A stretch of 64,000 bases of DNA, from positions 62,001-126,000 of the IMG/VR virus record IMGVR_UViG_3300024252_000004; one strand, 5' to 3'. This document shows positions 1,072 through 20,995 of the stretch, piece after piece. Position numbers and translations under genes: made by a program. The number at the start of each line of letters is the position of its first letter. Within the stretch, counting starts at the first letter, position 1. Below the pieces are notes generated by a model that saw only the letters and a program-made list of their open reading frames with translations, had not been told where the DNA came from and searched no databases.

Positions 1072-1072
1072 G

Positions 1073-5847: not shown

Positions 5848-6647
5848 TGGGTCGTAAGAAAAAAGTATTGGGAGTTATCCCTGCAAGGTATGGCTCCAAT
5901 AGATTGCCAGGTAAGCCACTGGCTGACATAGCAGGTAAGCCTATGATTCAATGGGTATATGAAAGGGCTATGTCTGCGGAACTTGATGGATTAGTTGTAG
6001 CTACAGATGATCAAAGGATTGTGGACGTAGTTAAGGCTTTCGGTGGCGATGTCGTAATGACATCTATGGATCATGTATCTGGCACCGCAAGAATGTGTGA
6101 AGTTGAAGGTATGAAAAGATTTGAGGACTACGACTACTTCATTAATATCCAAGGCGACCAGCCATTGATCGAAGAGTATACCATCAGGATGCTGTCGCTT
6201 AATCTTGTCAATTTCAAGCCAAATGAAATGGCGGTGCTGACGCTTGTGGCATCTCTTAAGAAAGACGAGATAAATAATCCTTCCGTTGCTAAGGTTGTTA
6301 CCGATAAAAATGGAAGAGCGTTATACTTTAGTCGTTCAGCAATTCCTTATACAAGGGAGGGAGATAGCGTCTCCCATTTCTATACAGATTTTCTTAGTAA
6401 GAAGAGTCCTTATCTTAAGCATCTTGGCGTTTATGGTTTTACAAAGAAGACTATCGATAAGGTTAGGGGATTGGAGACTTCTTATTTGGAGGAGACTGAG
6501 AAGCTTGAACAATTAACTTGGCTTTACGAAGGCATTCCTGTTTATACAGCTTTTGGTACGGATGTAAATAAGATATCGGTAGATACCCAAGAGGATCTCG
6601 ATAGGGTCAGGAAGATTGTGGAGAAGCGGGAAAAAGTGCGGTCATGA
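5847..6647 (+). CDS. kdsB: CMP-Kdo synthetase
   Basis: IPARYGSNRLPGKPLA, NIQGDQP, ALYFSRSAIP, HLGVYGF, EKLEQL, SVDTQED. Confidence 0.95.
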   Translation: MGRKKKVLGVIPARYGSNRLPGKPLADIAGKPMIQWVYERAMSAELDGLVVATDDQRIVDVVKAFGGDVVMTSMDHVSGTARMCEVEGMKRFEDYDYFINIQGDQPLIEEYTIRMLSLNLVNFKPNEMAVLTLVASLKKDEINNPSVAKVVTDKNGRALYFSRSAIPYTREGDSVSHFYTDFLSKKSPYLKHLGVYGFTKKTIDKVRGLETSYLEETEKLEQLTWLYEGIPVYTAFGTDVNKISVDTQEDLDRVRKIVEKREKVRS

Positions 6648-6703: not shown

Positions 6704-7288
6704 ATGAAAACAGCGCAAGAGATAATTCAGGAAGAGATTAAGGCACTTCAGGCGATACCTTTAACCGGTATCCAAGAAGCTGTTGACGCCATCGTGGCCT
6801 GCGAAGGTAAAATTGTCTTTACAGGTATGGGAAAGGCTGGCTTAATTGCACGAAAAATTGCAGCGACCTTTGCCTCAACAGGAACGCCAGCATTTTATAT
6901 GCATCCTTGCGAGGCGCAGCATGGCGATCTGGGAATGATCGGGAAAGGCGATATGATACTGGCATTCTCGAACTCAGGTAGGACGAGAGAAGTTGTTGAG
7001 ACCGTCTCTCTTGCTAAGATTTTAGTTGACGGCATGAAACTAGTTACAGTAACATCCAACAGGGCTGCTGAGCTTGCATTAATCTCCGATGTGGTAATCG
7101 AGACAGGAGGATATCCTGAGGTGTGCCCACTTGGAATGGCGCCTACTTGCTCAACAACAGCGATGCTTGTTATCGGAGATGTTCTATCTATGATGGTAAT
7201 GGAAGCTAAGGAATTCTCAATTGAGGAGTATTCTAAAAGGCATCATGGCGGCTATCTTGGACAGAAATCAAGAGGAGAAGTTAAATGA
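6704..7288 (+). CDS. kdsD: Arabinose-5-phosphate isomerase, SIS domain only (no CBS pair)
   Basis: TGMGKAGLIARKIAATFASTGTP, EAQHGDLG, SNSGRT, APTCSTT, RHHGGYLG. Confidence 0.88.
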   Translation: MKTAQEIIQEEIKALQAIPLTGIQEAVDAIVACEGKIVFTGMGKAGLIARKIAATFASTGTPAFYMHPCEAQHGDLGMIGKGDMILAFSNSGRTREVVETVSLAKILVDGMKLVTVTSNRAAELALISDVVIETGGYPEVCPLGMAPTCSTTAMLVIGDVLSMMVMEAKEFSIEEYSKRHHGGYLGQKSRGEVK

Positions 7289-8850: not shown

Positions 8851-9789
8851 GTGAAGAAGACAAGGATTGACATAGTTTATGCTAAAAGAAAATCGACTGC
8901 AATAGATAGTATTCCTTGGGTTGAGGGACTTTCAGAATATCTGAAAATCGATCCTGAGATTACAGTATCTTGCGCTCTTGATGGAACACCTGAAGCAGAT
9001 TTAATTATATCTCCAATGGGAACTGGGCATAACCACTCAAAAAGCTCTCGTGCCCTTAGTGATGTCATTAAGAATTCATCTTGCCCTAAGCTTATCGTGA
9101 CTAAAGGAATATTCTCCGGATGGGGGAATATGACAATGACTTTTTCGTATATTGATAGCGGAGGACACATCAATCTTTTTCCAAAAAAAAGGATGATGCA
9201 ACCGGAACATATTAGAAGATTGATAAAGAGAAAACCTACAGGTTTCTCCATACAGCCATGGAAAAGAAATGGGGACTATTTTCTCTTTTGTGCTCAGAAT
9301 AGTCGCCCTCCATATTTCTCATATTATTATAACATAAGTTACAATACTTGGGCGTATAATTGTATACAGCATTTGTTAAAGAAGACAGATGAAAAGATTA
9401 TATATAGATTCCATCCAAGGAAATATCACCAGAATGAGAATTTGAGGTTCGGCAAAAGATTAACAGAATTATCTGATAGGATAGAAGTCTCTCCGTTTGA
9501 AAAGTCATTACAAGATGATTTTGAAGGAGCGAAGAAGGTGTTTACCTACAACTCTGGCGTTGCGATCAAATCAGTTTTCGCAGGAATCCCAACAGTGGTA
9601 GGGTGCAGATATTTTACAGGTCCAACAGCAGTGGTTGGATACGAAAATTTCAAAAAAAATTTAAGGCCGAATAGAACCGAATGGTTTTACAGACTAGCTC
9701 ATACAACTTGGTCCAACAAGGAAGTTCTTGATGGAAAAGCAAACTCATATATTTATGAGCTTGGAATGAAAAAAGATTTTAAAAGGTAA
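8851..9789 (+). CDS. KpsS/KpsC-like (Capsule_synth) GT-B protein, paralogue 1
   Basis: YRFHP...SLQDDFEGAKKVFTYNSGVAIKSVFAGIP C-terminal pattern shared with paralogues. Confidence 0.6.
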   Translation: MKKTRIDIVYAKRKSTAIDSIPWVEGLSEYLKIDPEITVSCALDGTPEADLIISPMGTGHNHSKSSRALSDVIKNSSCPKLIVTKGIFSGWGNMTMTFSYIDSGGHINLFPKKRMMQPEHIRRLIKRKPTGFSIQPWKRNGDYFLFCAQNSRPPYFSYYYNISYNTWAYNCIQHLLKKTDEKIIYRFHPRKYHQNENLRFGKRLTELSDRIEVSPFEKSLQDDFEGAKKVFTYNSGVAIKSVFAGIPTVVGCRYFTGPTAVVGYENFKKNLRPNRTEWFYRLAHTTWSNKEVLDGKANSYIYELGMKKDFKR

Positions 9790-9792: not shown

Positions 9793-10401
9793 ATGGCAAA
9801 TAGATATGGAAATGTAACTAAAACTATCGCAGAATACGAGCCCCTTACTATCTGTGAGATTGGAACCTTCAGTGGGAGAAGAGCAATCTCTATGCTATTG
9901 GCGGCCCTTAAGTATAATAACGGTGTAAGCTATATAGGATACGATTTATTCGAAGAAGCTTCCGATGAAACTGATACTGAAGAATTCAACGGTAAAACTA
10001 CGAGAACAGAGGTGAGTAAGGTTAAAGAAGTCATCGAGAATAAGGTAACAAGAAAAGTTCGAAAAAATAAGAATGGAGACTTCGAGGTTGAACTTGTTAA
10101 AGGCAATACAAATGATGTTCTGCGTAAAGGGAAATATGATTTTGTATATATTGATGGAGGGCATCACATAGATACTATTAGACACGACTATTCCAAAGTC
10201 AGGCGCAGTAAGGTAATCATTTTTGATGACTATTATGATTGCGATGACAAAGATCTTCTTGCAAAAAGAACAGAGAAATTTGGATGCAATAATCTTATCC
10301 ATGAGCTTATGGAAGATCAGGAACTTCAAGTTTCTATCATGCCACTTTATGATACAAGCGGCGAATTCTATACCAAGCAGGTTTTGGTTATAAGAAAGTG
10401 A
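9793..10401 (+). CDS. Class I SAM methyltransferase (Methyltransf_24-like)
   Basis: EIGTFSG, GYDLF, DFVYIDGGH, IIFDDY. Confidence 0.78.
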   Translation: MANRYGNVTKTIAEYEPLTICEIGTFSGRRAISMLLAALKYNNGVSYIGYDLFEEASDETDTEEFNGKTTRTEVSKVKEVIENKVTRKVRKNKNGDFEVELVKGNTNDVLRKGKYDFVYIDGGHHIDTIRHDYSKVRRSKVIIFDDYYDCDDKDLLAKRTEKFGCNNLIHELMEDQELQVSIMPLYDTSGEFYTKQVLVIRK

Positions 10402-11297
10402 AAATCATCCTTTACAAGAGAAGAAAGAAGGAGCCGATGATTGATATCATTTATCCTATGCTGATGGAATCGATGTCCTCTCTTGAGAAGGATTTTCAGG
10501 TCAAATACGAGGATGAATACGAAGTCTCCGACATAGCTATTACTTATGGATTACACAAATACGCTACTAAAGGCGGAAGAGTAAGGAAAGCTATTTTTGA
10601 TGGGCAAGAGAAAGCCGGCAAAGATATGCTGATTATGGAGCGAGGGTTTCTAAAGCGTAGCGATTATTTTTCGCTTGGATTTAGCAACGTAAATGGTAGA
10701 GCTGAATTCTATAACCACAAAAGTCCATCAGATAGGTACAAGGAGCTAGGCATAGAACTATCCCCCTGGCGCGTTAAGGAAGACGGAATTATTCTATTAT
10801 GTGGCCAAGTAGCCTGGGACACCAATGTTCAGCACATCAATTATACAAAAGAGAAAAGTAAGAGTAAGATGATTAAAGGTTATCTTAATTGGCTTAGAGA
10901 TACTGCAATTTATTTGTCAGAAACTTACGACAAAGATGTTATTTTCAGACCTCATCCTTTATTCGCAAAGCCAAGTCTTTACAAAGAGGCTTTAGCTGGA
11001 GTTAATATAGGTTGGTCCGACAGGTCATTGGAGAAAGATCTTAAGGATTCTTATGTATGCGTTGCTTTTAATTCGAATACCTTAGTTGACGCAGCAATTA
11101 TGGGTGTACCGATTGTAGCTTTCGATAGAGGTTCTATGGCTTATCCTATTTCCAACAATATGAAAAAACTAAATAAATTGAAGCTCTACAAAAGAGAGCA
11201 ACTCCTTTTTGATATAGCATACTCTCAGTGGAATTCAAATGAAATTCTCAAAGGAATTCCATGGCAGAGGCTTAAGAAATCAAGGTATGACTCCTAA
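10398..11297 (+). CDS. KpsS/KpsC-like (Capsule_synth) GT-B protein, paralogue 2
   Basis: IMERGF, CGQVAWD, FRPHP, AFNSNTLVDAAIMGVP, IAYSQW. Confidence 0.65.
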   Translation: MKIILYKRRKKEPMIDIIYPMLMESMSSLEKDFQVKYEDEYEVSDIAITYGLHKYATKGGRVRKAIFDGQEKAGKDMLIMERGFLKRSDYFSLGFSNVNGRAEFYNHKSPSDRYKELGIELSPWRVKEDGIILLCGQVAWDTNVQHINYTKEKSKSKMIKGYLNWLRDTAIYLSETYDKDVIFRPHPLFAKPSLYKEALAGVNIGWSDRSLEKDLKDSYVCVAFNSNTLVDAAIMGVPIVAFDRGSMAYPISNNMKKLNKLKLYKREQLLFDIAYSQWNSNEILKGIPWQRLKKSRYDS

Positions 11298-12314
11298 TCT
11301 GCGAGCTTTTTTCTTAGAGTAATCTCCATTATCATTTAGCCGACTACGGAATCGATCCCATACGATTCCGTTTTTCATTTCATCACAGTTCCAACAGCTA
11401 TAAGCTAAGTTGTACAGCCACTGATCTCTATTTGGAAATTTTGGTGTAAGGATTTTGCTATAATTATGATTGGCAACAGGATATGTTAAACAGTCTTTGT
11501 TATCGGTAAAGATTGGGACGCCATTGATGACCGCCACAATAGTTGACGAAGATGTCATAGTAATGCAGGCGATAGCGCGCTCTGTTTCCTCAAGCATTGT
11601 GGTATTGTTAATAATTGATGGATGTCTGCCTATAATTCCTCCAGAGAACGTTATATTATTAACTCCGAGAAATTTTTTCCAGTGTCTTGATCTGTGAGTG
11701 ATTTCATCTCCACCTGGATGAAACCTGAGTCTAATCGGGAAATCGGTTTTCATTCTAATTTCTTTGATAGTATTTCTCAGCCATTTGTCTGCGTCATAAT
11801 TTCGAGTAGACCATCCGCGACCACGTTTATTGTCACTATTAAGACATATGAGAATATGATCACCTTCTTTACGATAGGGTTTTAGTACAATATTTTTCTC
11901 TTTACTAATTTTATCCCAACGATCTGATGGAGAGCCTTCATTAAAGTAGTAACCATCGCTTGGATACACAGAAGTATGAGAGACTCTAAGGTAATGAAGT
12001 GGATCAATTTGATTTTTCGGAAGATTGGTGCCGGCATATTTTAGCGGATCAGCATCAATGAATATACATTTTTTGCCGCGCGCCAAGTGAGCTTTAAATA
12101 CTTTTTTTCGCACACTTTGGGTATACCCAAGATTTTGCCCATAAAAGCCAAAGATAAGAGCGATGTCGCAGTTTCTATATTCTGGTTTATTTACGATAAT
12201 TGCTCTATCTTCAGACTTCCTAACACCTTCTGCAAAGCTATGCAAAATTCGTCTTTTTGAGTCAGTGGATGAGTTACCAACCGTTTCTAAAAAAATCCCA
12301 ACTTTCAGTCTCAC
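11280..12314 (-). CDS. KpsS/KpsC-like (Capsule_synth) GT-B protein, paralogue 3 (inverted)
   Basis: LRFHP, TSSSTIVAVINGVP, LAYSCW; GTG start behind GGAG. Confidence 0.65.
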   Translation of the reverse strand: MRLKVGIFLETVGNSSTDSKRRILHSFAEGVRKSEDRAIIVNKPEYRNCDIALIFGFYGQNLGYTQSVRKKVFKAHLARGKKCIFIDADPLKYAGTNLPKNQIDPLHYLRVSHTSVYPSDGYYFNEGSPSDRWDKISKEKNIVLKPYRKEGDHILICLNSDNKRGRGWSTRNYDADKWLRNTIKEIRMKTDFPIRLRFHPGGDEITHRSRHWKKFLGVNNITFSGGIIGRHPSIINNTTMLEETERAIACITMTSSSTIVAVINGVPIFTDNKDCLTYPVANHNYSKILTPKFPNRDQWLYNLAYSCWNCDEMKNGIVWDRFRSRLNDNGDYSKKKARRLGVIP

Positions 12315-12392: not shown

Positions 12393-13148
12393 ATGAGAAA
12401 CATATTATTAACATTTAGTGACTCATACATTGAAAATGCAAAGGCTATGCTATCATCCATATATACTCACTCCAAAAATATTAGGCTAATTTTGTATATA
12501 ATCAACGCTTCTGAAGAAAACAGGAAGAGCCTTGAAGAGGAGTTTGAGCTGCTTAGAGCATTGCGTAATGACATACTCATAGAAGAGAATTATATATTCA
12601 AAGATTTGGATGAGTCAATCAATAAGAGACATAAGACTAAAGAATACAGCGAGCTAATGGCTTACTCTGCGAACTTAAGATTCTTAGTAATATACAAATT
12701 GCTAAAGTCAAGAGAGCTTTTAGATTTGATTTATTTGGATACTGATTCTATTTTAAATAAGGATATCGAATTGTTTTATGAAGATGTTAAGGGCTACGAT
12801 ATTGCTTTCCGACTAAGGGAAGGCGCAAGTAAAACTAAAGGGGCACTAAGTGGTGTATTGTATTTTAAGAATTCAGATAAAATTCTTGAATTTACAAAGA
12901 CCTTAAAAAAGGAAGTCTCAAAGGCCGGAGTTCTTAAGTGGTATTCGGATCAGATAGCGCTAAGAGGAACTTTTTATAAAAACAGAGAGTTTGTCAATCA
13001 TTATCAGCTTTTAGATAAACATATAGATTGGATGTTAAATGATGACAGTATAATCTGGGTTGGAAAAGGTGCGTTCAAAGATTTTGAAAAGTACGTCGAG
13101 GTAAAGGAATGTTATCTTGAGAAATATCAAGAATTAATTAAGGAGTAA
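12393..13148 (+). CDS. GT-A/nucleotide-diphospho-sugar transferase-like protein
   Basis: YSANLRF, YLDTDS (DxD), SGVLYF, WYSDQ. Confidence 0.6.
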   Translation: MRNILLTFSDSYIENAKAMLSSIYTHSKNIRLILYIINASEENRKSLEEEFELLRALRNDILIEENYIFKDLDESINKRHKTKEYSELMAYSANLRFLVIYKLLKSRELLDLIYLDTDSILNKDIELFYEDVKGYDIAFRLREGASKTKGALSGVLYFKNSDKILEFTKTLKKEVSKAGVLKWYSDQIALRGTFYKNREFVNHYQLLDKHIDWMLNDDSIIWVGKGAFKDFEKYVEVKECYLEKYQELIKE

Positions 13149-13149
13149 A

Positions 13150-13920
13150 GTGTCTATTTTATATATCACATCTTTTAGTGGTCATCTCTATAATCTAACA
13201 GGAAAGAGGCTTATTGAGACCTTTAAGAAAACCAAAACAGAAGGTGACCTTTTTTGTTACGTAGAAGGTATGGACACTTCTTTAATCAATGGCAAAAATA
13301 TTACAGTTGAAGACATGAGCGATAATAGGTTCTATAGAAGATGGTTCGAAGCAAATCTTGATATTATACCTGAAAAATTTGGTGGCAAAGCTACAAAGGA
13401 AAGTAGTTTTCAGGCATTTAAGACTCCAAACTATAGAACTGCGCAGTGGACTAAGAAGATTGCAACAATGAAGTACGCCATGGAAAATTATACGGACCAA
13501 TATGATTACTTTATGTGGGTAGATTGCGATTGCTTTTTTACAAATACGTTTACTGAGCAAGATTTAGTTAAAGCACTTCAAGGAAAGTCATTCGGCTATC
13601 ATCTCGGCAGGGACCGTACCAAGAAAAGGATGGGCGTAGAGACAGGGCTTCTTGGGTTTAAGAACGATAAGTACTCTAAGAAGGCATTATCCAAATGGAT
13701 TAAGAAGTATAATGGTGCTGGATTTAAACAGCACGAATGGTGGAACGATGCACACATGTTTTTTTATGTTCTTGATGCAAACCCTAAGCTTAAGGAGAAA
13801 GGTATAGATTTAGTAACTGATTATGGAGACACAGGTAGGTCAAAATCACACGTCATTATGAGAGGAGACCTTGGTAACTTTTTTGATCATCAAAAAGGAT
13901 ACCACAAACGAAACCTATGA
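13150..13920 (+). CDS. GT-A-like glycosyltransferase
   Basis: WVDCDC (DxD), VETGLLGF, EWWNDA, FDHQKG. Confidence 0.6.
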   Translation: MSILYITSFSGHLYNLTGKRLIETFKKTKTEGDLFCYVEGMDTSLINGKNITVEDMSDNRFYRRWFEANLDIIPEKFGGKATKESSFQAFKTPNYRTAQWTKKIATMKYAMENYTDQYDYFMWVDCDCFFTNTFTEQDLVKALQGKSFGYHLGRDRTKKRMGVETGLLGFKNDKYSKKALSKWIKKYNGAGFKQHEWWNDAHMFFYVLDANPKLKEKGIDLVTDYGDTGRSKSHVIMRGDLGNFFDHQKGYHKRNL

Positions 13921-14729
13921 AATTTTCCGTAAAACATGATAGCGGTTTTAAAGGCGGAATCAGAGATGAGATAAGGGCTTTAAAACCGAGGGTAGTTAAA
14001 AAATTCTCAGACATTAGAGATGATTATCTTTTTGTAAATGGGATGAAAGAAATGATCTCGATCAAAAGGCATACAGGTGGTTTTCCGCAGAACTATATTT
14101 TTGTAGACTCAGGTTATCTTGGTAATTTCAGAGATAAAGTCAAATATACAAGAATGATTCCAAATGCAATGCATCCGCCAGACTACGACGTTCCTCGTGG
14201 AGAAATATTTTCGTTTCTAAGGGGATATGACAAATATTATGAGACGGAGTATCTTAAGATGCTGGAGAATCAGTATGACTACAGTGCATATAATGGCGCC
14301 ATTATTATTCCTCCATCAAGGAAGTATTGTTTTCTTGAAGAGATAGATCCAGTAAGATGGGCTCAGGTTGTTGAATATGTAGAATATTCTTCCTATTTTG
14401 ACTCTTTCTATGTGAGAAAGAAATCTAAAGATAGAGAGGAGCGTATGTTACACAATCCTATCTATAATGATATGAGCGAAAAATCTGCTTTGATTTGTCA
14501 TAGTAGCATTGCTTCGGTAGATGCTCTTCTATATGGAATGCCATTTATTGATTTAGGAGCCGGCCCCCTTGTTCACATGTCTTCAAATAAAAAGAGTTTA
14601 TCGAGAAATAAGTTTCATAGCCAGGAGCAGATAGTCGATGCTCTCAATAAGCTGCTATTTTACCAATGCGTTCCGTTTACTTTTAAAAAGAAGTTACTTG
14701 AGATTATGCATTTTTATGAGTGCCTTTAA
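13917..14729 (+). CDS. Divergent KpsS-like GT-B protein, paralogue 4
   Basis: FVDSGYL, HSSIASVDALLYGMP, LLFYQ pattern like the other paralogues. Confidence 0.5.
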   Translation: MKFSVKHDSGFKGGIRDEIRALKPRVVKKFSDIRDDYLFVNGMKEMISIKRHTGGFPQNYIFVDSGYLGNFRDKVKYTRMIPNAMHPPDYDVPRGEIFSFLRGYDKYYETEYLKMLENQYDYSAYNGAIIIPPSRKYCFLEEIDPVRWAQVVEYVEYSSYFDSFYVRKKSKDREERMLHNPIYNDMSEKSALICHSSIASVDALLYGMPFIDLGAGPLVHMSSNKKSLSRNKFHSQEQIVDALNKLLFYQCVPFTFKKKLLEIMHFYECL

Positions 14730-15467
14730 GGCCGCTCCACTTGTAAGCTCTTCACGACTGAACTGATTATACATAAGATTTTTGATCCATTCTGTTCTGT
14801 CTGGACGGATAAGTTTTTCAACATTCGAGAGCTTTTGTGCTGATACGAATTTGCTGGCAGCTTCGCCAAGTACGATTGCGGGTGTGCCATGGAAAATAGC
14901 TTCTGTAGCAGCATTGCTGTTATAAGCAACAATACAATGTGCATTTTTAGCGGCATTAACTAAGGATTTTGAACCTTCGTATCTATCTCGAACTATTGGT
15001 CTCGCCCTAATAAGGATGTCCCTATTCGAATATTCCCTGAGTTCGGTAACAGTAGACTCCAGCCATTTTTTGTTATCAAACCCCCAATACCTGCCGGCCT
15101 TTGCGCATGGAGGGACAACAAGAATGTAATCTCCGTTTTTTTTCCAAGATTTAGGCTTAATTTTGATACCTCTACGCCATGAGCTAAAGTCTCTCATCCT
15201 CTCCATTTGAAAAGAATTATAACATACTCGCATCCATTGCTTCTTTCCGTCATCAATAATGTATCCCCTATCGATAAAGAAGTAAGGAATTCCGTAAGCC
15301 TCAAGTTTTATGATTAGCTTCATTCTTCCGAAGCCGGTAAAGGCAACGGTATATCCTTTCTTTTTTAGCTTTACTAAATCTTGTTTGTGTATGTTTGTGA
15401 TGGGAGCATTGGCTCCTTCTGCGAATTCACGAGTGAATCTCGTATCGTCATGGCAAATCAATTTCAT
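14694..15467 (-). CDS. KpsS-like GT-B protein, paralogue 5 (inverted)
   Basis: FIDRGY, VVPP, AYNSNAATEAIFHGTP, LMYNQF. Confidence 0.6.
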   Translation of the reverse strand: MKLICHDDTRFTREFAEGANAPITNIHKQDLVKLKKKGYTVAFTGFGRMKLIIKLEAYGIPYFFIDRGYIIDDGKKQWMRVCYNSFQMERMRDFSSWRRGIKIKPKSWKKNGDYILVVPPCAKAGRYWGFDNKKWLESTVTELREYSNRDILIRARPIVRDRYEGSKSLVNAAKNAHCIVAYNSNAATEAIFHGTPAIVLGEAASKFVSAQKLSNVEKLIRPDRTEWIKNLMYNQFSREELTSGAALKALIKMHNLK

Positions 15468-16252
15468 TAGGTTATCCTATGGTATTTAGTTAAAAAGTCT
15501 ATAGCTTCACCGTTTGACAGTTCGTCAACAGTGAATTGGTTACAGAATAAGTTTTTCAACCAAAGCTCTCTATCAGGATAGCAAAGGCTCTCTATGTCTG
15601 AGAGGTCTGTCCTGGCAACAAATTTGCTTGCGGCATCTCCAAGGACGATTGCTGGAACCCCACTAAAGATAGCCTCAGTTGCTGCATTGCTATTATACAC
15701 AACGATGCAGTGAGCATCTTCAAGTGCAGCTAACAATGATGTATCTCCATGATACCTTGCGATTTTATTATCAGGCTTGTACCTTATGATCACTTCTCTA
15801 TCGGAGTTTTTATCAAGATATTTAACAACTCTATTTAGCCATTTATCTTTATCAAATTTATAGAACTCGCTGGTCTTTTTACTTGGAGGACACACCACAA
15901 TTTTAGAGCCCCCTTTTCTCCATGGCTCGGGAGTTACAGGTGAGACGTTTCTCCATCCTTTAATATCTCTCATCTCATTCATCTGAAGGGAGTTGTAGGA
16001 TACACGTATCCAAAATTTTCTTTCCCCAAAAATATAAGCCCTGTCGAGAAAGAAGTATGGAATGCCAAGCTCTTCAAATTTTGATATAAGTTTAAGTCTT
16101 CCAAGTCCCGTAACTACGGCAGTATAACCAGAGCTTTTGATTGCTCTTAAATCCTGTTCGTATAAGTTCATAAGCGGAGCCTTAGCTCCGAACGAGAAAT
16201 GACTTGAGAATTTTTTGTCATCATGGCATATAATCTTCATTCGTTCACCCAT
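15467..16252 (-). CDS. KpsS-like GT-B protein, paralogue 6 (inverted; tandem duplicate of paralogue 5; start may be 16240)
   Basis: MKIICHDD vs MKLICHDD, FLDRAY, VYNSNAATEAIFSGVP, LFCNQF. Confidence 0.6.
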   Translation of the reverse strand: MGERMKIICHDDKKFSSHFSFGAKAPLMNLYEQDLRAIKSSGYTAVVTGLGRLKLISKFEELGIPYFFLDRAYIFGERKFWIRVSYNSLQMNEMRDIKGWRNVSPVTPEPWRKGGSKIVVCPPSKKTSEFYKFDKDKWLNRVVKYLDKNSDREVIIRYKPDNKIARYHGDTSLLAALEDAHCIVVYNSNAATEAIFSGVPAIVLGDAASKFVARTDLSDIESLCYPDRELWLKNLFCNQFTVDELSNGEAIDFLTKYHRIT

Positions 16253-16266
16253 ACTAATTATTTCGA

Positions 16267-16274
16267 TATTAATA
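16267..16274. promoter_or_regulatory. Palindromic TATTAATA in a divergent intergenic region (candidate bidirectional promoter)
   Basis: 24 nt from + start 16299 and 26 nt from - start 16240. Confidence 0.35.
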
Positions 16275-16298
16275 TGAGATGTAACATAGCTGAAGGAA

Positions 16299-16916
16299 AT
16301 GAGGCGGCAATTGATAATCAGTCATAAATATAAATTGATTTTCGTTAAGACTAAAAAAACATCAGGTTCTACTCTGGAGTTTCTGTTGTCAAGCAGGCTT
16401 GGGCCGAAAGATATCTGCACCGGTTCCGAACGTGATGGGACATCGAAAGTTAATACAAACATATCTAACGGGCACATGAATCTGTCAAAGATTAAGAAGA
16501 TTTTTCCAAAGGAATTCGAGAACTACTATAAATTTTCAATAGAACGAAATCCTTGGGACAAAGTTGTTAGTTCATATTTTTGGCATAACAAAGTGAAACC
16601 AGAGAAGTATGCTGGTATGGATTTCACAAAGTACATGATAGCAGCTAAGGGGCTTCCGGTCGGTTGGAAAATATACACTATTGGTGGAGAGATAGCAGCA
16701 GATAAAGTTTTTTTTTATGAAAACTTAAATGAAATGTATAATGAGCTTAATAGGCAATTTGATTTACAGATAACTCCCGAAGAAATCCGAGACACCAGAA
16801 AGAAATCTGGTATCAGAAAAGTTGGACATTATTCTGAGCTGCACAACGAAGAAACAATAGAAATAGTTAAAAAGCGCTTTGCAGATGAAATCAAAGCTTT
16901 CAGCTATACTTACTGA
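16299..16916 (+). CDS. Sulfotransferase family 2 protein
   Basis: IFVKTKKTSGST (5'-PSB loop), ERNPWDKVVSSY (3'-PB). Confidence 0.8.
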   Translation: MRRQLIISHKYKLIFVKTKKTSGSTLEFLLSSRLGPKDICTGSERDGTSKVNTNISNGHMNLSKIKKIFPKEFENYYKFSIERNPWDKVVSSYFWHNKVKPEKYAGMDFTKYMIAAKGLPVGWKIYTIGGEIAADKVFFYENLNEMYNELNRQFDLQITPEEIRDTRKKSGIRKVGHYSELHNEETIEIVKKRFADEIKAFSYTY

Positions 16917-16924
16917 GGAAATAT

Positions 16925-17560
16925 ATGAAACATGTTGGCGGACACGAAGGCAAAACTTGGATAGATTATGGTGCCTTAAAAGCTTTGGTAGATAGATTTC
17001 AAAATGCCAAAACATTTATTGATATAGGTTGCGGTCCAGGCAAACAGGTTGAGGTGGCGAAGGCTTTGGGGCTATCTGCTATTGGGGTCGATGGAGATCC
17101 TGAGATGACAAAGTTGAAGCATGTTAATCTTTTTGATTTTTCTAAGAAAAAAGCAGCTAAAGATGATCTGCCATTTCTTCCGAAAAGAAAATATTTCGAC
17201 ATTGGGTGGTCAACAGAATTTCTCGAACATATTGATGAGAAATACATTGAGAATTTTATGCCATTATTTGCTTTGTGCAAAGTTGTGGTCATAACTCATG
17301 CAACTCCGGGTCAAAAAGGGCATCATCATGTCAATGAACAATTATTTCCTTATTGGAAAGATATATTTCATAGTTATGGCTTAAATGAAGATAAAGAACT
17401 CACAAAGCTTCTTCGGATTAAATCAACAATGAAACAGAAAAAGATTAACCACTTTGTAAAGTATAAGAAAGACGGTACACCAAAGGTTAAAAGGATCAAG
17501 TCATCCTTCATGGTAAAATCAGGAAGAGTATTTATAAACACAAAGTTAAAGGAGCTATGA
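16925..17560 (+). CDS. Class I SAM methyltransferase
   Basis: IDIGCGPG, GVDG, STEFLEHI, HATPGQKGHHHVNEQ. Confidence 0.75.
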   Translation: MKHVGGHEGKTWIDYGALKALVDRFQNAKTFIDIGCGPGKQVEVAKALGLSAIGVDGDPEMTKLKHVNLFDFSKKKAAKDDLPFLPKRKYFDIGWSTEFLEHIDEKYIENFMPLFALCKVVVITHATPGQKGHHHVNEQLFPYWKDIFHSYGLNEDKELTKLLRIKSTMKQKKINHFVKYKKDGTPKVKRIKSSFMVKSGRVFINTKLKEL

Positions 17561-18531
17561 TGCTTAGAGCAGTTGTAACAGGTGCCGGCCAGGACTCGTC
17601 CTATTTGGCAGACCTTCTTCTTGAGAAGGGATATGAAGTTTTGGTGTTTACTCGCCGTCGTTCTGTTAATAATGAGAACGAAAATCTTAAACATATTATC
17701 GATCATCCTAACCTAACGGTGATGCATGGAGACATTACAGACCCAACTTTCGTCGGAAGAATTCTGCACGATTTCAAACCGCATGAGTATTACGGTCTTG
17801 CGGCACAGTCCCATGTAGGATACTCCTTTAAAGATCCTGTTCATACATTTGACGTAACAGGTAGGGCAGTTGTTATGCAGCTTGATCTCATTAGAGAGTT
17901 CAGCCCCGCAACCCGTTTCTATAATGCTGCTACCTCTGAACTGTTCGGTGGCCTTCATGTTCCTGATACGGGTTATACAGAGGAGTCTCCGTTCTATCCA
18001 CGCTCACCATATGCAGTGGCAAAGGCCGCAGGATTCTATGCCACAAGGAATTATAGAGAGGCGTACGGTCTGTTTGCCTGTTCAGGAATTCTATTCAATC
18101 ATTCCTCGCCAAGAAGAGGGCATGATTTTGCCACAAGAAAGATGACCCGAGGTATCGCAAAGGTGAAGCTTGGAATGGAAGAGCATTTGAGGATGGGCAA
18201 CCTTGAGCCGTATAGAGATGAGGGTCATGCAAAAGATTATGTCAAGGCTCAGTGGCTTATGTTGCAGCAGGAAGAGCCAGATGATTTCGTAATTGCCACT
18301 GGTTATGGGGCAAGCATAGAGGATATGTTTAAGTATATATGTGACCTTGCAGGTTTGAAATTTGAGGATGTATACAGATCAGACCCCAGATTCATGAGGC
18401 CATCGGATGTTCCGTTCCTTAGAGGCGATCCTTCAAAGGCAAAGACCGTTCTTGGATGGGAGCCTGAGTACGATTGGCAGAAACTTCTTAAGGAAATGTA
18501 TGAAGCGGATTTGGCCGAGTTAGATGTTTAA
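17557..18531 (+). CDS. gmd: GDP-mannose 4,6-dehydratase
   Basis: GQDSSYLA, AAQSHV, ATSELFG, PRSPYAVAK, GILFNHSSPRRG, FATRK. Confidence 0.95.
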   Translation: MMLRAVVTGAGQDSSYLADLLLEKGYEVLVFTRRRSVNNENENLKHIIDHPNLTVMHGDITDPTFVGRILHDFKPHEYYGLAAQSHVGYSFKDPVHTFDVTGRAVVMQLDLIREFSPATRFYNAATSELFGGLHVPDTGYTEESPFYPRSPYAVAKAAGFYATRNYREAYGLFACSGILFNHSSPRRGHDFATRKMTRGIAKVKLGMEEHLRMGNLEPYRDEGHAKDYVKAQWLMLQQEEPDDFVIATGYGASIEDMFKYICDLAGLKFEDVYRSDPRFMRPSDVPFLRGDPSKAKTVLGWEPEYDWQKLLKEMYEADLAELDV

Positions 18532-19162
18532 GAAGCTTTTAAAACGAAACGATTTTGATTATTGTATAGTAGGAAATTCGCCATGCGAAGTTGGCCAGAA
18601 AAATGGTGAGAAGATTGATTCTCACAAGTTAATCTTCAGGTTCAATGATTTCTCGTTGGACCAAGGTTTTCAGGAGGATTATGGCTCCAAGGTAAATATA
18701 TGGATCCGAGGAACTAACGATAAACTGGTTTACACAATGGAACAGAAGAAGGAATTATTAGAAGATTTAGATCTCATTATCCTTCGCGCCAAAGATGATA
18801 GAAATAAGAAGTTTAGAGACTACTGCAAGACTAACGGTATAAAATATTACGTGCTTCCGCTTGAAAATGAGCTGGAGCTTACGAAGGACCTTGGGCGATG
18901 CCCAAGCACAGGTCTTCTTTTGCTCTATAGCATCAAGAAGGTTACGGGTGGCTTGGACCGAAGCAGAGTTTATGGATTTTCTTTTTGCAGAGAGAATAGA
19001 AGCAAAAGAAAAACCGGTGGTCAGATTCATTACTACAACAAAGATGATCTTGTAAATCCTGTTACCGGAAAGGTAGAGAGCATTAAGAATACTTTCCTCA
19101 TCTCAAAGCATGATTGGGGGAGGGAAGAAATATATTTTAGGAACAAGATACTGAGAGGTTGA
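18524..19162 (+). CDS. GT29-family sialyltransferase-like protein
   Basis: Sialylmotif L (CIVGNS...IDSHKLIFRFN...EDYGSK), S (PSTGLLLL...VYGF), HYY and VS-like HDWGRE. Confidence 0.8.
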   Translation: MFKKLLKRNDFDYCIVGNSPCEVGQKNGEKIDSHKLIFRFNDFSLDQGFQEDYGSKVNIWIRGTNDKLVYTMEQKKELLEDLDLIILRAKDDRNKKFRDYCKTNGIKYYVLPLENELELTKDLGRCPSTGLLLLYSIKKVTGGLDRSRVYGFSFCRENRSKRKTGGQIHYYNKDDLVNPVTGKVESIKNTFLISKHDWGREEIYFRNKILRG

Positions 19163-19163: not shown

Positions 19164-20015
19164 ATGAGTGAAGAAGCTGAAACAAAAGAAGAGTTTGTGC
19201 CTGTAAAGATCGGTGTCATTGGGATGGGATTTGTTGGAGGATCCGTTTTTGAATTTTTTTCGAAAGCAGGAGAACTTATGTATTCCTATGATAAGAAAGA
19301 ACTCTGGACTATACCAGGAGGCGAAGGGGAATTTGCAAGTAACAAATTTGAGGATTTAATTCCTACAGACTTTGTATTTATATGTCTGCCTACACCTTAC
19401 ATTGAAGGGTTCGGCTTTGACTATACAGCGCTGCATGAGAATTTCCTGAAGTTGGCACAAGCAAAGTACCAGGGAATCGTCGTCGTCAAAAGCACCATGG
19501 AGCCAGGAACTTTGAGAGCTTTAGCTGATAAGTATAAGTTAGCAATGGTTCATAACCCGGAATTTCTTACTGCAAGAACTGCGGTTGAAGATTTTGCCAA
19601 CCAGAAGCATGTAGTCGTTGGAGGCTTTGAGTTCTCCGTATGCCAAAAGGTTGTAGCTCTATATCAGAGACATTTCGAGGCACAGTATACGATTTGTGAT
19701 GCTGAACAAGCAGAGTTGATGAAGCTATTCTGTAACAACTTCTATGCAGTAAAGGTTCAATTGTTCAATGAGTTTGCTTTGACCTGCAAAAGAATGGGCG
19801 TTAAATATGAAGATGTGAGAAGCACTATGCTTAGAAACGGCTGGATTAATCCTATGCACACTGATGTGCCGGGACCAGACGGGCAATTTAGTTATGGAGG
19901 GGCATGTTTCCCCAAGGACACCAATGCTTTGCGAGACTTTATGAAACGTCACGGCGTTCCTTGCGAAGTTCTTGAGGCATGTATTAGTGAACGAAATAAG
20001 ATGAGGAAAGATTAA
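19164..20015 (+). CDS. ugd: UDP-glucose/GDP-mannose dehydrogenase family protein (short form)
   Basis: IGMGFVG, CLPTP, KST, NPEFL, GGACFPKD. Confidence 0.85.
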   Translation: MSEEAETKEEFVPVKIGVIGMGFVGGSVFEFFSKAGELMYSYDKKELWTIPGGEGEFASNKFEDLIPTDFVFICLPTPYIEGFGFDYTALHENFLKLAQAKYQGIVVVKSTMEPGTLRALADKYKLAMVHNPEFLTARTAVEDFANQKHVVVGGFEFSVCQKVVALYQRHFEAQYTICDAEQAELMKLFCNNFYAVKVQLFNEFALTCKRMGVKYEDVRSTMLRNGWINPMHTDVPGPDGQFSYGGACFPKDTNALRDFMKRHGVPCEVLEACISERNKMRKD

Positions 20016-20017: not shown

Positions 20018-20995
20018 ATGAATTATGAATACACAAGAGCCCTGGTAACAGGGGGAGCCGGATTTATAGGAAGTCACCTTGTTGACAGATTGTTAAGCGA
20101 TGGCTTAGAGGTTTGTGTAGTTGACAACTATAATTCTGGAGATAAAGAAAACATTAAAGATCACTTCAAGAACTCAAACTGTATGATAGAAAATCAGGGT
20201 ATTGAAGGAGAAGGGTTACATGATATTTTCAGAGTGTTTAGACCGGAGATGGTATTTCATCTTGCAGCTATCCCTGGGGTATATCAGTCAGTGCTTGAGC
20301 CGGCGAAGACAGCCGAGGTAAATCTTGTTGGCACTGCCAATGTTCTTGCTATGGCAGAAAAATTTGAGACAAAGAGAGTGTTATTCGCCTCTTCGTCTTC
20401 TGTTTATGGCGGTAAAGCAGAAATGCCAACAAGCGAAGCGTCTCTGCTTATGCCTAAGTCACCATATGCTTTGCAGAAGTATATTGGTGAAGAATATTGC
20501 AGGTATTACTCAAAGAATACATCAGTTGATACAGTAGCTCTAAGGCTATTCAATGTCTTTGGGCCCAGACAGAAAGGCAACTCGGCATACTCTGCTGTTA
20601 TCGCAGCATTTTTAGAAGCAAAGAAGAAGGGCTTTAGCGCCAATGTATATGGTGATGGAGAACAGACCAGAGACTTCTGTTATGTGGATAATGTTGTGGA
20701 GGCATTTATTCAGGCAAGCCAGCATAACTCACGATTCAATGGCGAAGGGTTCAATATAGCTTTCGGAGAAAGGACTTCGGTTAATGATCTTTTAGATATG
20801 ATTGGAGTCGAAGAGTACGATACTTATGACGATAGGCCGGGAGATGTAAAGGATTCTTGGGCATCTTTCGATAAGGCAAAATCTTGGTTCGGCTACAGTC
20901 CAAAAGTTTCTGTGCTACGTGGATTAGAGCTAACTGCACAGTGGTATTTGGGGGATGCATATGAGGTCGGAAAGAAGAAATCTAAAAGAGATTAG
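20018..20995 (+). CDS. NAD-dependent nucleotide-sugar epimerase/dehydratase
   Basis: TGGAGFIGSHL, HLAA, SSSSVYG, YALQK (YxxxK), NVFGP, RDFCYV. Confidence 0.9.
   Translation: MNYEYTRALVTGGAGFIGSHLVDRLLSDGLEVCVVDNYNSGDKENIKDHFKNSNCMIENQGIEGEGLHDIFRVFRPEMVFHLAAIPGVYQSVLEPAKTAEVNLVGTANVLAMAEKFETKRVLFASSSSVYGGKAEMPTSEASLLMPKSPYALQKYIGEEYCRYYSKNTSVDTVALRLFNVFGPRQKGNSAYSAVIAAFLEAKKKGFSANVYGDGEQTRDFCYVDNVVEAFIQASQHNSRFNGEGFNIAFGERTSVNDLLDMIGVEEYDTYDDRPGDVKDSWASFDKAKSWFGYSPKVSVLRGLELTAQWYLGDAYEVGKKKSKRD

What the first reader, a model, noticed from the sequence alone, without database searches (positions are those of the whole stretch)
18524..19162. Eukaryote-type GT29 sialyltransferase in a phage
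Seen: sialylmotifs L, S, HYY and a VS-like HxxxxE in a 212-aa soluble protein with no TM anchor. Known: GT29 is mainly the animal/plant Golgi family; bacteria mostly use GT38/42/52/80, with few GT29. Inference: this is the probable user of the NeuA product, and a minimal GT29 useful for evolution and biocatalysis studies.
Basis: partly seen in the sequence, partly recalled or inferred. Interest (0 to 1): 0.6.

Follow-up and report, generated by a model that had tools for sequence, protein, structure and literature searches.

The report
Minimal sialyltransferase-family enzyme in jumbo phage
A 395-kb marine phage carries a stripped-down, soluble 212-residue member of the GT29 sialyltransferase family, of the bacterial rather than the animal type, inside a 22-kb gene island that makes two activated acidic sugars (CMP-Kdo and a CMP-sialic-acid-like sugar) and holds many other sugar-adding enzymes.

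Summary
Window 18524-19162 (+) is an intact 212-aa ORF. It passes Pfam's GT29 threshold and carries sialylmotifs L, S, III (HYY) and VS (HxxxxE) at family-invariant positions. It has no membrane anchor. Its model (pLDDT 81) matches mammalian sialyltransferase structures (Z 9.7-11.8), ahead of GT42 (Z about 7-8) and unrelated folds (Z about 4). The record is a 395-kb phage found in many seawater metagenomes.

"Eukaryote-type" is not supported. The nearest relatives are about 30 phage homologues of similar length, then multidomain bacterial proteins (GT29 fused to KpsC-like, TPR or GT2 domains; E 1e-40 to 1e-15). Animal enzymes match only at E about 1e-3. TM-less, disulfide-less bacterial GT29s were described in 2018.

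The donor is unresolved.
- The phage encodes both KdsA/KdsB/KdsD (CMP-Kdo) and a NeuB-like synthase, a HAD-like phosphatase and a NeuA-like synthetase.
- In two bacterial loci, 55-61%-identical NeuB homologues sit directly beside a GT29 gene, which favours the nonulosonic donor (about 0.55).
- Other bacterial GT29s sit with Kdo genes, so CMP-Kdo stays plausible (about 0.3).
- The island also holds six KpsC/WbbB-like paralogues and a TagF/polysialyltransferase-like GT-B, so GT29 is not the only candidate user.

It is a new phage clade of a known family. No activity, acceptor or expression is shown.

The parts
18524..19162 (+). GT29-family glycosyltransferase, 212 aa, soluble. Motif L spans about residues 14-41(64), motif S 127-153, motif III H169-Y170-Y171, motif VS H196...E201.
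   Evidence: ORF. Pfam PF00777 37.6 bits against cut-off 23. Family alignment A1. Profile against PDB, ST8SiaIII E 1.1e-6. AF2 pLDDT 81. Foldseek and VIA-align top hits are all GT29 structures, Z 9.7-11.8.
17557..18531 (+). GDP-mannose 4,6-dehydratase-like SDR. Its stop overlaps the GT29 start by 8 nt.
   Evidence: PF16363 E 3e-99. TIGR01472 gmd 333 bits, below its cut-off of 415. Kept next to or near GT29 in related phages.
19164..20015 (+). Short (283 aa) UDP-glucose/GDP-mannose dehydrogenase-like protein. It has the N-terminal and central domains; no C-terminal domain was detected.
   Evidence: PF00984 and PF03721. The order GT29 -> short dehydrogenase (261-283 aa) -> epimerase is conserved in L010 and L011.
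20018..20995 (+). NAD-dependent nucleotide-sugar epimerase/dehydratase. The best model is the TviC-like UDP-GlcNAcA 4-epimerase, below its cut-off.
   Evidence: PF01370 E 1e-60. NCBIfam.
3471..4379 (+). NeuB-family nonulosonic acid (or 9-phosphate) synthase. It is short, with no C-terminal SAF part matched. The likely true start is the internal Met about 22 codons in.
   Evidence: PF03102 E 3e-64. TIGR03569 183 bits, below its cut-off of 399. 61% and 55% identical to the NeuB genes that sit next to GT29 genes in bacterial loci L041 and L015.
4376..5053 (+). NeuA/PseF-like CMP-nonulosonate synthetase, 225 aa.
   Evidence: PF02348 E 5e-20. Best NCBIfam model is PseF at 110 bits, below cut-off. 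36-38% identical to the synthetases beside GT29 in L015 and L041.
3024..3347 (+). Small HAD-like phosphatase (107 aa, DLDHT motif). Candidate sugar-phosphate phosphatase for either pathway.
   Evidence: ORF and motif read from the sequence. PDB 9iqw 'capsule biosynthesis protein' E 1.3e-4.
5068..5847 (+). KdsA, Kdo-8-phosphate synthase.
   Evidence: NF003543 332 bits against cut-off 242; TIGR01362 315 against 314.
5847..6647 (+). KdsB, CMP-Kdo synthetase.
   Evidence: NF003952 277 bits against cut-off 193; TIGR00466 225 against 155.
6704..7288 (+). KdsD/KpsF-like arabinose-5-phosphate isomerase, SIS domain only.
   Evidence: PF01380. TIGR00393 172 bits, below its cut-off of 204.
2074..3027 (+). 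GT-B protein of the TagF / UDP-GlcNAc 2-epimerase / polysialyltransferase-like kind, two genes upstream of NeuB. Rival user of the CMP-nonulosonate.
   Evidence: ESM Atlas search by features and by structure: Glyphos_transf, Epimerase_2, A-2_8-polyST, TM 0.7-0.8. Weak Pfam Epimerase_2 hit, E 0.018. A lead only.
8851..9789 (+). KpsC/WbbB-like (beta-Kdo transferase fold) paralogue 1.
   Evidence: Paralogy by blastp. hhalign of the six paralogues against Capsule_synth domains gives probability 95.7%, E 8.6e-9.
10398..11297 (+). KpsC/WbbB-like paralogue 2.
11280..12314 (-). KpsC/WbbB-like paralogue 3.
13917..14729 (+). KpsC/WbbB-like paralogue 4, the most divergent.
14694..15467 (-). KpsC/WbbB-like paralogue 5.
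   Evidence: 51% identical to paralogue 6. hhalign.
15467..16252 (-). KpsC/WbbB-like paralogue 6, the one that was modelled.
   Evidence: AF2 pLDDT 90.8. The top Foldseek PDB hits (17 of the first 18 rows shown) are the retaining beta-Kdo transferases KpsC, WbbB and KrkA, E 2.5e-6 to 1e-3.
154..2077 (+). Two GT-B (GT4 / Glyco_trans_1_2-like) glycosyltransferases: 154-1071 and 1073-2077.
   Evidence: Pfam. ESM Atlas.
12393..13920 (+). GT8-like protein (12393-13148) and DUF6492-like protein (13150-13920). Both hits are below Pfam cut-offs.
16299..17560 (+). Sulfotransferase (16299-16916) and SAM methyltransferase (16925-17560). Further methyltransferases lie at 8088-8849 and 9793-10401.

Best explanation
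The ORF encodes a cytoplasmic, single-domain, prokaryote-type GT29 glycosyltransferase.

How it probably works, by homology to solved GT29 enzymes (inferred, not shown here):
- Motifs L and S bind a CMP-activated 2-keto-3-deoxy acid sugar.
- The motif-III His (H169) contacts the phosphate.
- The motif-VS His (H196) acts as general base in an inverting transfer.

The most likely donor is the CMP-nonulosonic acid made by the phage's own module: a NeuB-like synthase, a small HAD-like phosphatase and a NeuA-like synthetase. The exact sugar (Neu5Ac, Kdn or another) is unknown.

The enzyme would add this sugar to a glycan assembled in the infected cell's cytoplasm by the other soluble enzymes of the same 22-kb island:
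- GT4-like, GT8-like and six KpsC-like transferases.
- Methyltransferases and a sulfotransferase.
- Nucleotide-sugar enzymes translationally coupled to the GT29 gene (GMD, a short UGDH-like protein, an epimerase).

Whether the finished glycan decorates virion proteins or the host envelope is not determined.

Shown here: family membership, motifs, fold, phage origin, gene context and its conservation. Inferred: catalysis, donor, acceptor, target.

The confidence of 0.5 applies to the whole statement including the nonulosonic donor. That it is a GT29-family CMP-ulosonate transferase I put at about 0.9.
For: Family and fold:
- Pfam hit over cut-off.
- Motifs invariant in 27 close and about 150 distant homologues.
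- Family profile against PDB.
- AF2 model with Foldseek and VIA-align: GT29 structures Z 9.7-11.8 over 167-183 of 212 residues, GT42 Z 6.8-8.2, next fold Z 4.4.

Nonulosonic donor:
- The phage's NeuB is 61% and 55% identical to NeuB genes that lie immediately beside a CMP-synthetase and a GT29 gene in two bacterial loci, L041 and L015. In L041 a UDP-glucose dehydrogenase also flanks the GT29, as in the phage.
- Those two bacterial GT29s group together in the tree with support 94.
- The six KpsC/WbbB-like paralogues are natural consumers of CMP-Kdo. GT29 is the island protein whose solved relatives are all sialyltransferases; the GT-B ORF at 2074-3027 has only a weak polysialyltransferase-like lead.

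Module conservation: GT29, NeuB, the NeuA-like gene, KdsA/B/D and the KpsC-like paralogues are kept together in three phage lineages at 38-64% GT29 identity.

Cytoplasmic assembly: none of the 30 island ORFs checked (1-24.4 kb) looks like a membrane protein. Two have a single hydrophobic window (KD 1.68): the GT-B ORF 2074-3027 and the dehydrogenase-like ORF 19164-20015. No flippase, polymerase or ABC transporter was seen.

The gene is intact and identical in independent seawater assemblies.
Against: - No biochemical data exist for this protein. None for any bacterial-type GT29 was found in the papers read.
- The phage also makes CMP-Kdo.
- The closest non-phage relatives by score are fused or adjacent to KpsC-like domains and to KdsA/KdsB/KdsD.
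- Plant GT29 RCKT1 is a putative Kdo transferase.
- ORF 2074-3027, which lies closer to NeuB than GT29 does, is a GT-B with polysialyltransferase/TagF-like features and could be the NulO transferase.
- Co-occurrence across phages cannot separate the two donors, because both pathways are always present.
- The tree leaves the sister group of the phage clade unresolved.
- HMMER aligns only motif L with significance to animal enzymes. Residue-level superposition of H169 and H196 on the catalytic histidines was not inspected.
- No transcript evidence covers the gene.
Confidence: 0.5

Rival explanations
1. The GT29 is an inverting alpha-Kdo transferase. It uses the CMP-beta-Kdo made by the phage's KdsA/KdsB/KdsD, as proposed for plant RCKT1. 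The CMP-nonulosonate is then used by another enzyme, for example the GT-B ORF 2074-3027 or one of the KpsC-like paralogues.
For: - KdsA and KdsB score above NCBIfam cut-offs in the same island.
- The best-scoring non-phage relatives are GT29 domains fused to or next to KpsC-like Capsule_synth domains. In L009 they lie beside KdsA, KdsB and KdsD; in L005 and L007 beside a KdsB-like synthetase.
- GT29 members in plants are implicated in Kdo transfer (PMC11288761 and PMC5811610).
- A polysialyltransferase/TagF-like GT-B lies closer to NeuB than GT29 does.
Against: - Six KpsC/WbbB-like paralogues already provide ample CMP-Kdo users.
- Two bacterial loci place a GT29 directly beside homologues of the phage's NeuB and NeuA-like genes, with no kdsA match found there.
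- Every GT29 structure matched is a sialyltransferase.
Confidence: 0.3
2. The gene is a eukaryote-type Golgi sialyltransferase recently captured from a eukaryote.
For: The Pfam family is dominated by eukaryotic sequences, and all solved relatives are mammalian.
Against: - There is no TM anchor or stem.
- The Cys position of motif L is Ala in 85 of 150 homologues, and no conserved motif-S Cys was seen in the family alignment.
- Animal enzymes match at E 0.004 and weaker over 50 residues. Prokaryotic multidomain proteins match at 1e-40 to 1e-15 over 150-200 residues.
- The nearest relatives' architectures and gene neighbourhoods are bacterial.
- Only 1 of the first 60 representatives has a hydrophobic N-terminus.
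Confidence: 0.04
3. The protein is a catalytically dead or repurposed GT29 fold, for example a CMP-sugar- or glycan-binding subunit.
For: It is much shorter (212 aa) than the Pfam model (272 positions) and than animal catalytic domains. Residues 160-190 are modelled with low confidence.
Against: Every motif residue linked to CMP binding and catalysis is invariant across a family diverged to 39% identity and across 150 distant homologues. That pattern is what selection on catalysis would give.
Confidence: 0.05

Closest known systems
Bacterial GT29 sialyltransferase-like proteins (Petit et al. 2018, Sci Rep 8:2946, PMC5811610)
   Same: All four sialylmotifs are present. There is no transmembrane domain and no conserved L/S disulfide cysteines. 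The organisms are mostly marine. No function has been assigned.
   Different: That set came from alpha-, gamma- and epsilon-proteobacterial genomes. This protein is phage-encoded, single-domain and only about 212 aa. With about 30 metagenomic homologues it forms its own well-supported clade (99). Many bacterial relatives are fused to KpsC-like, TPR or GT2 domains.
Animal Golgi sialyltransferases with solved structures (ST8SiaIII 5BO6, ST6GalNAc2 6APJ, ST3Gal1 2WNB, ST6Gal1 4JS1)
   Same: The GT-A variant fold matches, Z 9.7-11.8, with 167-183 residues aligned. Motifs L, S and III align in register. The HxxxxE motif is present.
   Different: Identity is 17-22%. The phage protein has no TM or stem, no disulfide pair and about 60-90 fewer residues in the catalytic domain. 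It has a 27-residue spacing between the motif III and VS histidines, including a roughly 10-residue insert that the divergent phage subfamily lacks. Its location is cytoplasmic rather than Golgi-lumenal.
Plant GT29 RCKT1 (putative RG-II CMP-beta-Kdo transferase; PMC11288761)
   Same: It is a GT29 member implicated in use of CMP-Kdo rather than CMP-sialic acid. The phage also supplies CMP-Kdo and uronic-acid-type nucleotide-sugar enzymes.
   Different: RCKT1 is a Golgi membrane protein. No direct sequence comparison was run here. This is a functional analogy only.
GT42 sialyltransferases CstI/CstII of Campylobacter jejuni
   Same: They share the related GT-A variant-2 fold, are soluble bacterial enzymes and use a CMP-Neu5Ac donor.
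   Different: Structural similarity is lower (Z 6.8-8.2, 11-14% identity), and GT42 lacks the sialylmotifs. The protein is not GT42.
Myxoma virus alpha-2,3-sialyltransferase (a poxvirus GT29; recalled from my own knowledge, not checked here)
   Same: It is a virus-encoded GT29.
   Different: It is a vertebrate-derived ST3Gal-type membrane enzyme of an animal virus. The phage enzyme is prokaryote-type.
Phage 'cell-wall synthesis and modification' genes, e.g. kdsA/kdsB in cyanomyovirus S-SCSM2R (PMC12801897)
   Same: It is a marine phage of over 200 kb carrying kdsA, kdsB, a UDP-glucose dehydrogenase and many glycosyltransferases.
   Different: That paper does not mention sialic acid. No paper in the library pairs GT29 with phages in this sense.

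Membership tests
CAZy GT29 / Pfam PF00777 | Match to the family HMM above the curated threshold | tested here: met
   37.6 bits against cut-off 23, E 2.1e-9. Precomputed PF00777 is listed for all 27 homologues.
CAZy GT29 / Pfam PF00777 | Sialylmotif L (xVGNS...ID...RxN) | tested here: met
   Residues 14-41 align to ST8SiaIII, ST6Gal1, ST6GalNAc2 and ST3Gal1. G17, N18, D32, R39 and N41 are conserved in at least 147 of 150 distant homologues.
CAZy GT29 / Pfam PF00777 | Sialylmotif S (PSxG...YGF) | tested here: met
   P127-S128-T-G130 ... G151-F152 aligns in register with ST8SiaIII in the profile search, though that domain alone is not significant. The positions are invariant in the family.
CAZy GT29 / Pfam PF00777 | Motif III (H-Y-Y/F/W-D/E/N) | tested here: met
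   H169-Y170-Y171-N aligns to HYYD of ST8SiaIII. H is found in 113 and Y in 132 of 150 distant homologues.
CAZy GT29 / Pfam PF00777 | Motif VS (HxxxxE) carrying the catalytic His | tested here: met
   H196-D-W-G-R-E201. H is found in 136/136 and E in 126/126 ungapped homologues. The structural alignments span model residues 1-212. Residue-level superposition on the catalytic His was not inspected.
CAZy GT29 / Pfam PF00777 | GT-A variant fold of the solved sialyltransferases | tested here: met
   Foldseek E 4e-6 to 2e-3; VIA-align Z 9.7-11.8. These stand clearly above GT42 (about 7-8) and unrelated folds (4.4 or less).
CAZy GT29 / Pfam PF00777 | Inverting transfer from a CMP-activated sialic or ulosonic acid | not testable with these tools
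   Needs an enzyme assay.
Eukaryote-type (Golgi) sialyltransferase | Type II topology: N-terminal TM anchor plus stem | tested here: not met
   Maximum hydropathy is 0.81. The catalytic motif L starts at residue 14.
Eukaryote-type (Golgi) sialyltransferase | Conserved disulfide between motif L and motif S cysteines | tested here: not met
   C14 is present, but that position is Ala in 85 of 150 homologues, and no conserved Cys is seen within motif S. Petit et al. describe the same for bacterial GT29.
Eukaryote-type (Golgi) sialyltransferase | Nearest relatives are eukaryotic | tested here: not met
   The nearest relatives are phage and bacterial multidomain proteins, E 1e-70 to 1e-15. Animal structures match at E 0.004 and weaker. 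No labelled eukaryotic sequences were available for a tree.
Retaining beta-Kdo transferases GT99/GT107 (KpsC, WbbB), for the six neighbouring paralogues and not for the GT29 | Fold and Capsule_synth-type profile similarity | tested here: met
   hhalign probability 95.7%, E 8.6e-9. The top Foldseek hits (17 of the first 18 rows shown) are KpsC, WbbB or KrkA.
Retaining beta-Kdo transferases GT99/GT107 (KpsC, WbbB), for the six neighbouring paralogues | Catalytic Asp nucleophile (QxxxD-type motif) and HP motif | tested here: inconclusive
   An 'hP' aligns with the template 'HP'. Where the template has the acidic Q-V-E-D-D segment, the paralogues have C-P-P-S-K-K-type sequence. The nearly invariant D70 may substitute. 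This was not resolved.

The most novel reading that the evidence does not exclude
A widespread lineage of marine jumbo phages (200-420 kb) builds its own acidic glycan in the host cytoplasm, rich in Kdo and a sialic-acid-like sugar and further methylated and sulfated. It uses dual CMP-ulosonate pathways, six KpsC-like transferases and a minimal GT29 that adds the nonulosonic acid. The phage uses this glycan to coat its virions, a 'sialylated' phage analogous to glycan-coated giant viruses, rather than to remodel the host. If so, phages would be a reservoir and vehicle for the bacterial GT29 lineage from which eukaryotic sialyltransferases are thought to derive. The 212-aa enzyme would also be the smallest natural sialyltransferase scaffold.
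Probability: 0.2. Interest if true: 0.8.

Novelty: new member of a known kind. Interest (0 to 1): 0.5.

Why it matters
GT29 is the family behind all animal sialylation. Its prokaryotic branch was found only in 2018 and, in the papers read here, has no assigned activity.

A compact, soluble 212-aa version without a disulfide pair or a membrane anchor should be easy to express in bacteria. It would suit donor-specificity tests (Neu5Ac, Kdn, Leg/Pse, Kdo), structural work on the minimal catalytic core and glyco-engineering.

Its setting matters too. A conserved phage island with two CMP-ulosonate pathways and at least 12 glycosyltransferase-like genes suggests that some marine jumbo phages synthesise complex acidic glycans themselves. 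That bears on virion decoration, host-surface remodelling and the evolutionary spread of sialylation genes.

The full-text searches run here found no paper describing a phage GT29.

Tried and rejected
- PHROGs and NCBIfam gave no hit for the protein.
- tblastn against 50,697 GenBank phage records, and megablast of 20 kb of the window, gave no match.
- Pattern-based scans found few extra loci: 3-6 viral contigs and one Syntrophobacter MAG. This is a limit of the method, not evidence of rarity.
- Cluster look-up gave no names for the nearest relatives.
- Co-occurrence was tried to separate the donors and failed. Every sufficiently complete related phage has both the Kds and the NeuB/NeuA-like genes. 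The more divergent viral contigs are 10-50% fragments with neither.
- The FastTree phylogeny of 178 GT29 domains did not resolve the sister group of the phage clade. No labelled eukaryotic sequences could be added, so the direction of transfer was not tested.
- Expression: one metatranscriptome holds contigs identical to 16305-16631 (the sulfotransferase gene) and a 90-95%-alike fragment at 20054-20085, but nothing over the GT29 gene. DNA carry-over cannot be excluded.
- Terminase_6C and Phage_sheath_1 were not found. Terminase_6N scored only just over its cut-off.
- One search was a mistyped request and returned an error.
- Genome-wide stop-codon recoding was considered because of a tRNA with anticodon CTA. 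It was rejected: coding density is 91% under table 11, and TAG ends 88 of 518 ORFs.
- No complex prediction was run, because no specific binding claim is made.
Full report
**What is there.** Window 18524-19162 (+) is an uninterrupted ATG-to-TGA ORF of 212 codons. Its ATG lies 8 nt inside the end of the upstream GDP-mannose-4,6-dehydratase-like gene. The next gene, a short UDP-glucose-dehydrogenase-like ORF, starts 1 nt after its stop. The three genes, plus a following epimerase, therefore look translationally coupled. The protein has no hydrophobic segment.

**Is it GT29?** Yes, on the tests that could be run.
- Pfam PF00777 scores 37.6 bits against a gathering threshold of 23, E 2.1e-9. Only motif L (residues 12-64) is aligned.
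- A word-indexed search of 5.8 billion proteins returned 27 homologues of 193-221 aa at 39-84% identity, all flagged PF00777.
- The invariant columns of their alignment are the sialylmotifs: GNSP17-20, ID31-32 and RFN39-41 (L); PS127-128, G130 and GFS151-153 (S); HY169-170 (III); H196 and E201 (VS).
- A profile of this alignment hits human ST8SiaIII at E 1.1e-6. A second, individually insignificant stretch aligns motif S and the HYY motif in register.
- An AlphaFold2 model (pLDDT 81, pTM 0.81) finds only mammalian GT29 structures at the top of Foldseek (E 4e-6 to 2e-3).
- VIA-align gives Z 9.7-11.8 for GT29 structures with 167-183 of 212 residues aligned. GT42 CstI/CstII score Z 6.8-8.2, and unrelated folds Z 4.4 or less.
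- Across 150 more distant homologous domains the same motif residues are the best-conserved positions.

**Is it a phage?** Yes.
- The window is bases 62001-126000 of a 395,127-bp IMG/VR record that CheckV rates complete.
- Coding density under table 11 is 91%. There are 44 tRNAs and a tmRNA.
- PHROG hits cover helicases, DnaB, RNR and PhoH. There is a Terminase_6N hit at the record's end, a weak, sub-threshold tail-sheath C-terminal hit in a block of giant ORFs, and a TubZ-like tubulin.
- The exact protein occurs on 15 contigs, the longest 414 kb.
- The region is held by at least 18 seawater metagenome runs. Contigs from three independent runs show no differences over the gene.

**Eukaryote-type? 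No.**
- An exhaustive HMMER search of 1.84 billion cluster representatives found 821 clusters at E <= 1e-3 and 280 at E <= 1e-10.
- Of the 88 nearest, 87 carry PF00777. Fifteen are fused to Capsule_synth (KpsC/KpsS-type) domains, about twelve to TPR repeats, and others to GT2, GT1 or GT8 domains.
- Only one of the first 60 has a hydrophobic N-terminus.
- The loci inspected are bacterial: next to tgt/queA, toxin-antitoxin genes, dnaA/dnaN/gyrB, tatC, or KpsMT-like ABC transporter genes.
- These proteins match the phage protein at E 1e-40 to 1e-15 over 150-200 residues. Animal enzymes match at E 0.004 and weaker over 50 residues.
- The motif-L cysteine position is Ala in most homologues, and no conserved motif-S cysteine was seen.
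- Petit et al. 2018 had already reported bacterial GT29s with all four motifs, no TM domain and no disulfide cysteines, mostly from marine proteobacteria, and argued that eukaryotic GT29 derives from them.
- The family is nevertheless sparse in genomes: 2 of 301 genomes sampled in one phylum and 0 of 14 control genomes.
- In a tree of 178 domains the phage family (32 rows) is one clade with support 99 on a long stem. Its sister group is unresolved. A second short-protein clade that includes four viral contigs is separate.

**Context.** Window 1-22 kb is a glycan island whose ORFs all look soluble. It contains:
- Two GT4-like GT-B enzymes.
- A GT-B with TagF / 2-epimerase / polysialyltransferase-like features.
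- A 107-aa HAD-like phosphatase.
- A short NeuB-family synthase and a NeuA/PseF-like cytidylyltransferase, both below equivalog cut-offs.
- KdsA and KdsB above cut-offs, and a SIS-only KdsD-like isomerase.
- Four methyltransferases, a sulfotransferase, a GT8-like protein and a DUF6492-like protein.
- Then the GMD, GT29, short UGDH-like and epimerase genes.

Six ORFs without Pfam hits are paralogues of one another. They match a Capsule_synth profile by hhalign (probability 95.7%, E 8.6e-9). The modelled one (pLDDT 90.8) hits almost only the retaining beta-Kdo transferases KpsC, WbbB and KrkA at the top of Foldseek. Their catalytic Asp could not be confirmed.

The island, including GT29, both CMP-sugar pathways and the KpsC-like paralogues, is conserved in two further phage lineages whose GT29s are 64% and 38% identical. 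The order GT29, short dehydrogenase, epimerase is kept in three lineages.

**Which donor?** This is the main open point.

For a nonulosonic acid:
- The phage NeuB is 61% and 55% identical to NeuB genes that, in bacterial loci L041 and L015, lie directly beside a CMP-synthetase and a GT29 gene. The synthetase is fused to a HAD hydrolase domain in both; a cupin is fused in L015 and encoded as a separate neighbouring gene in L041.
- L041 also has a UDP-glucose dehydrogenase next to the GT29, echoing the phage arrangement.
- The six KpsC-like proteins are obvious consumers of CMP-Kdo.

For Kdo:
- The best-scoring non-phage relatives are fused or adjacent to KpsC-like domains. They sit with KdsA/KdsB/KdsD (L009) or a KdsB-like synthetase (L005, L007).
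- Plant GT29 RCKT1 is a putative CMP-Kdo transferase.
- The GT-B ORF two genes upstream of NeuB could be the nonulosonate transferase.

My estimates are about 0.55 for a CMP-nonulosonate, about 0.3 for CMP-Kdo, and the remainder for other or no activity. The HAD phosphatase, and the HAD and cupin partners in the bacterial loci, hint at a 9-phosphate (Kdn- or Neu5Ac-9-P-type) route. That is speculation.

**Target of the glycan.** No flippase, polymerase, ABC transporter or initiating phosphotransferase is encoded in the island. The island follows a block of giant ORFs, one of which has a weak tail-sheath signal. That fits cytoplasmic glycosylation of virion proteins. Peripheral action on host lipid-linked intermediates, as KpsC and KpsS do, is not excluded.

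**Limits.**
- There is no activity, acceptor, expression or host information.
- HMMER alignment to animal enzymes is significant only for motif L.
- Model coordinates could not be inspected at residue level.
- No eukaryotic sequences could be placed in the tree.
- Several neighbour annotations are below curated cut-offs or rest on a language-model look-alike search, and are marked as such.

Noticed in passing
window 8851-9789(+), 10398-11297(+), 11280-12314(-), 13917-14729(+), 14694-15467(-), 15467-16252(-): Six paralogous ORFs have no Pfam hit, yet by hhalign and by an AF2 model with Foldseek they have the fold of the retaining beta-Kdo transferases KpsC/WbbB/KrkA. The acidic QxxxD-type nucleophile segment is not obviously conserved in them.
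   Followed up: yes
window 30304-34342: A GT4-GT2-GT4 gene trio lies directly upstream of a TubZ-like tubulin (32843-34342; PF00091 and TubZ-like_C). The same glycosyltransferase-tubulin neighbourhood occurs in related phage contigs L011, where GT1 and tubulin are fused in an 813-aa product, and L012.
   Followed up: partly
G000:C1:302460-302537, outside the window: ARAGORN calls a tRNA with anticodon CTA (reported as Pyl, i.e. a TAG suppressor) among 44 tRNAs, and a tmRNA at 325213-325615. There is no sign of genome-wide recoding: TAG ends 88 of 518 ORFs and coding density is 91% under table 11. Local or late-gene use was not examined.
   Followed up: partly
window 19164-20015; L010 10643-11479; L011 10645-11430: The UDP-glucose/GDP-mannose dehydrogenase-like gene after GT29 is consistently short (261-283 aa; N-terminal and central domains only, no C-terminal UDP-binding domain detected). 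It looks like a conserved truncated form rather than a broken gene.
   Followed up: partly
window 3024-3540: A 107-aa HAD-like ORF with a DLDHT motif weakly matches PDB 9iqw 'capsule biosynthesis protein'. It is followed by a 66-aa Cys/His/acid-rich ORF (3340-3540) just before NeuB. A 106-aa ORF sits at the same place in L040.
   Followed up: partly
window 44524-51036: A PrkA/YeaG-like serine kinase (643 aa, phrog_22605) is 36% identical to genes of Thermus phages and matches several unannotated 595-642-kb uncultured-phage records. It is followed by ORFs matching phrog_19072 (weaker hit to a 'sporulation protein' PHROG) and phrog_35217. This may be a phage copy of the bacterial yeaG-yeaH-ycgB stress module.
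   Followed up: no
window 51807-54989: The ribonucleotide reductase large subunit is 1060 aa. PHROG matches split into residues 16-328 and about 708-992. The roughly 380-residue gap suggests an intein or another insertion.
   Followed up: no
G000:C1:6281-56672, upstream of the window: A block of nine giant ORFs (795-3218 aa) has almost no Pfam or PHROG matches. One (15901-19110) has a weak tail-sheath C-terminal hit. The glycan island starts right after this block and a glycosyltransferase-like ORF (58056-59648).
   Followed up: partly
window 16305-16631: A seawater metatranscriptome run (X21) holds two 151-nt contigs identical to the sulfotransferase gene. Nothing covers the rest of the 4.7-kb stretch laid, apart from a 32-nt piece at 20054-20085 that is only 90-95% alike. 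This is not proof of transcription.
   Followed up: partly
loci L005/L006, L007, L009, L013, L041 (bacterial): Bacterial GT29 domains are repeatedly fused to or adjacent to KpsC-like Capsule_synth domains, up to four per protein, and to TPR repeats. One Syntrophobacter MAG contig carries four such ORFs. In L007 the fusion is followed by an HMGL-like aldolase-type gene and a KdsB-like synthetase, possibly a route to an unusual ulosonic acid.
   Followed up: partly
window 36916-37422, 38910-39671; G000:C1:334579-336177: The phage also carries a fatty-acid-hydroxylase-family ORF, an N6/N4 DNA methylase, and elsewhere in the genome a GroEL-like chaperonin (phrog_5725, E 4e-142).
   Followed up: no
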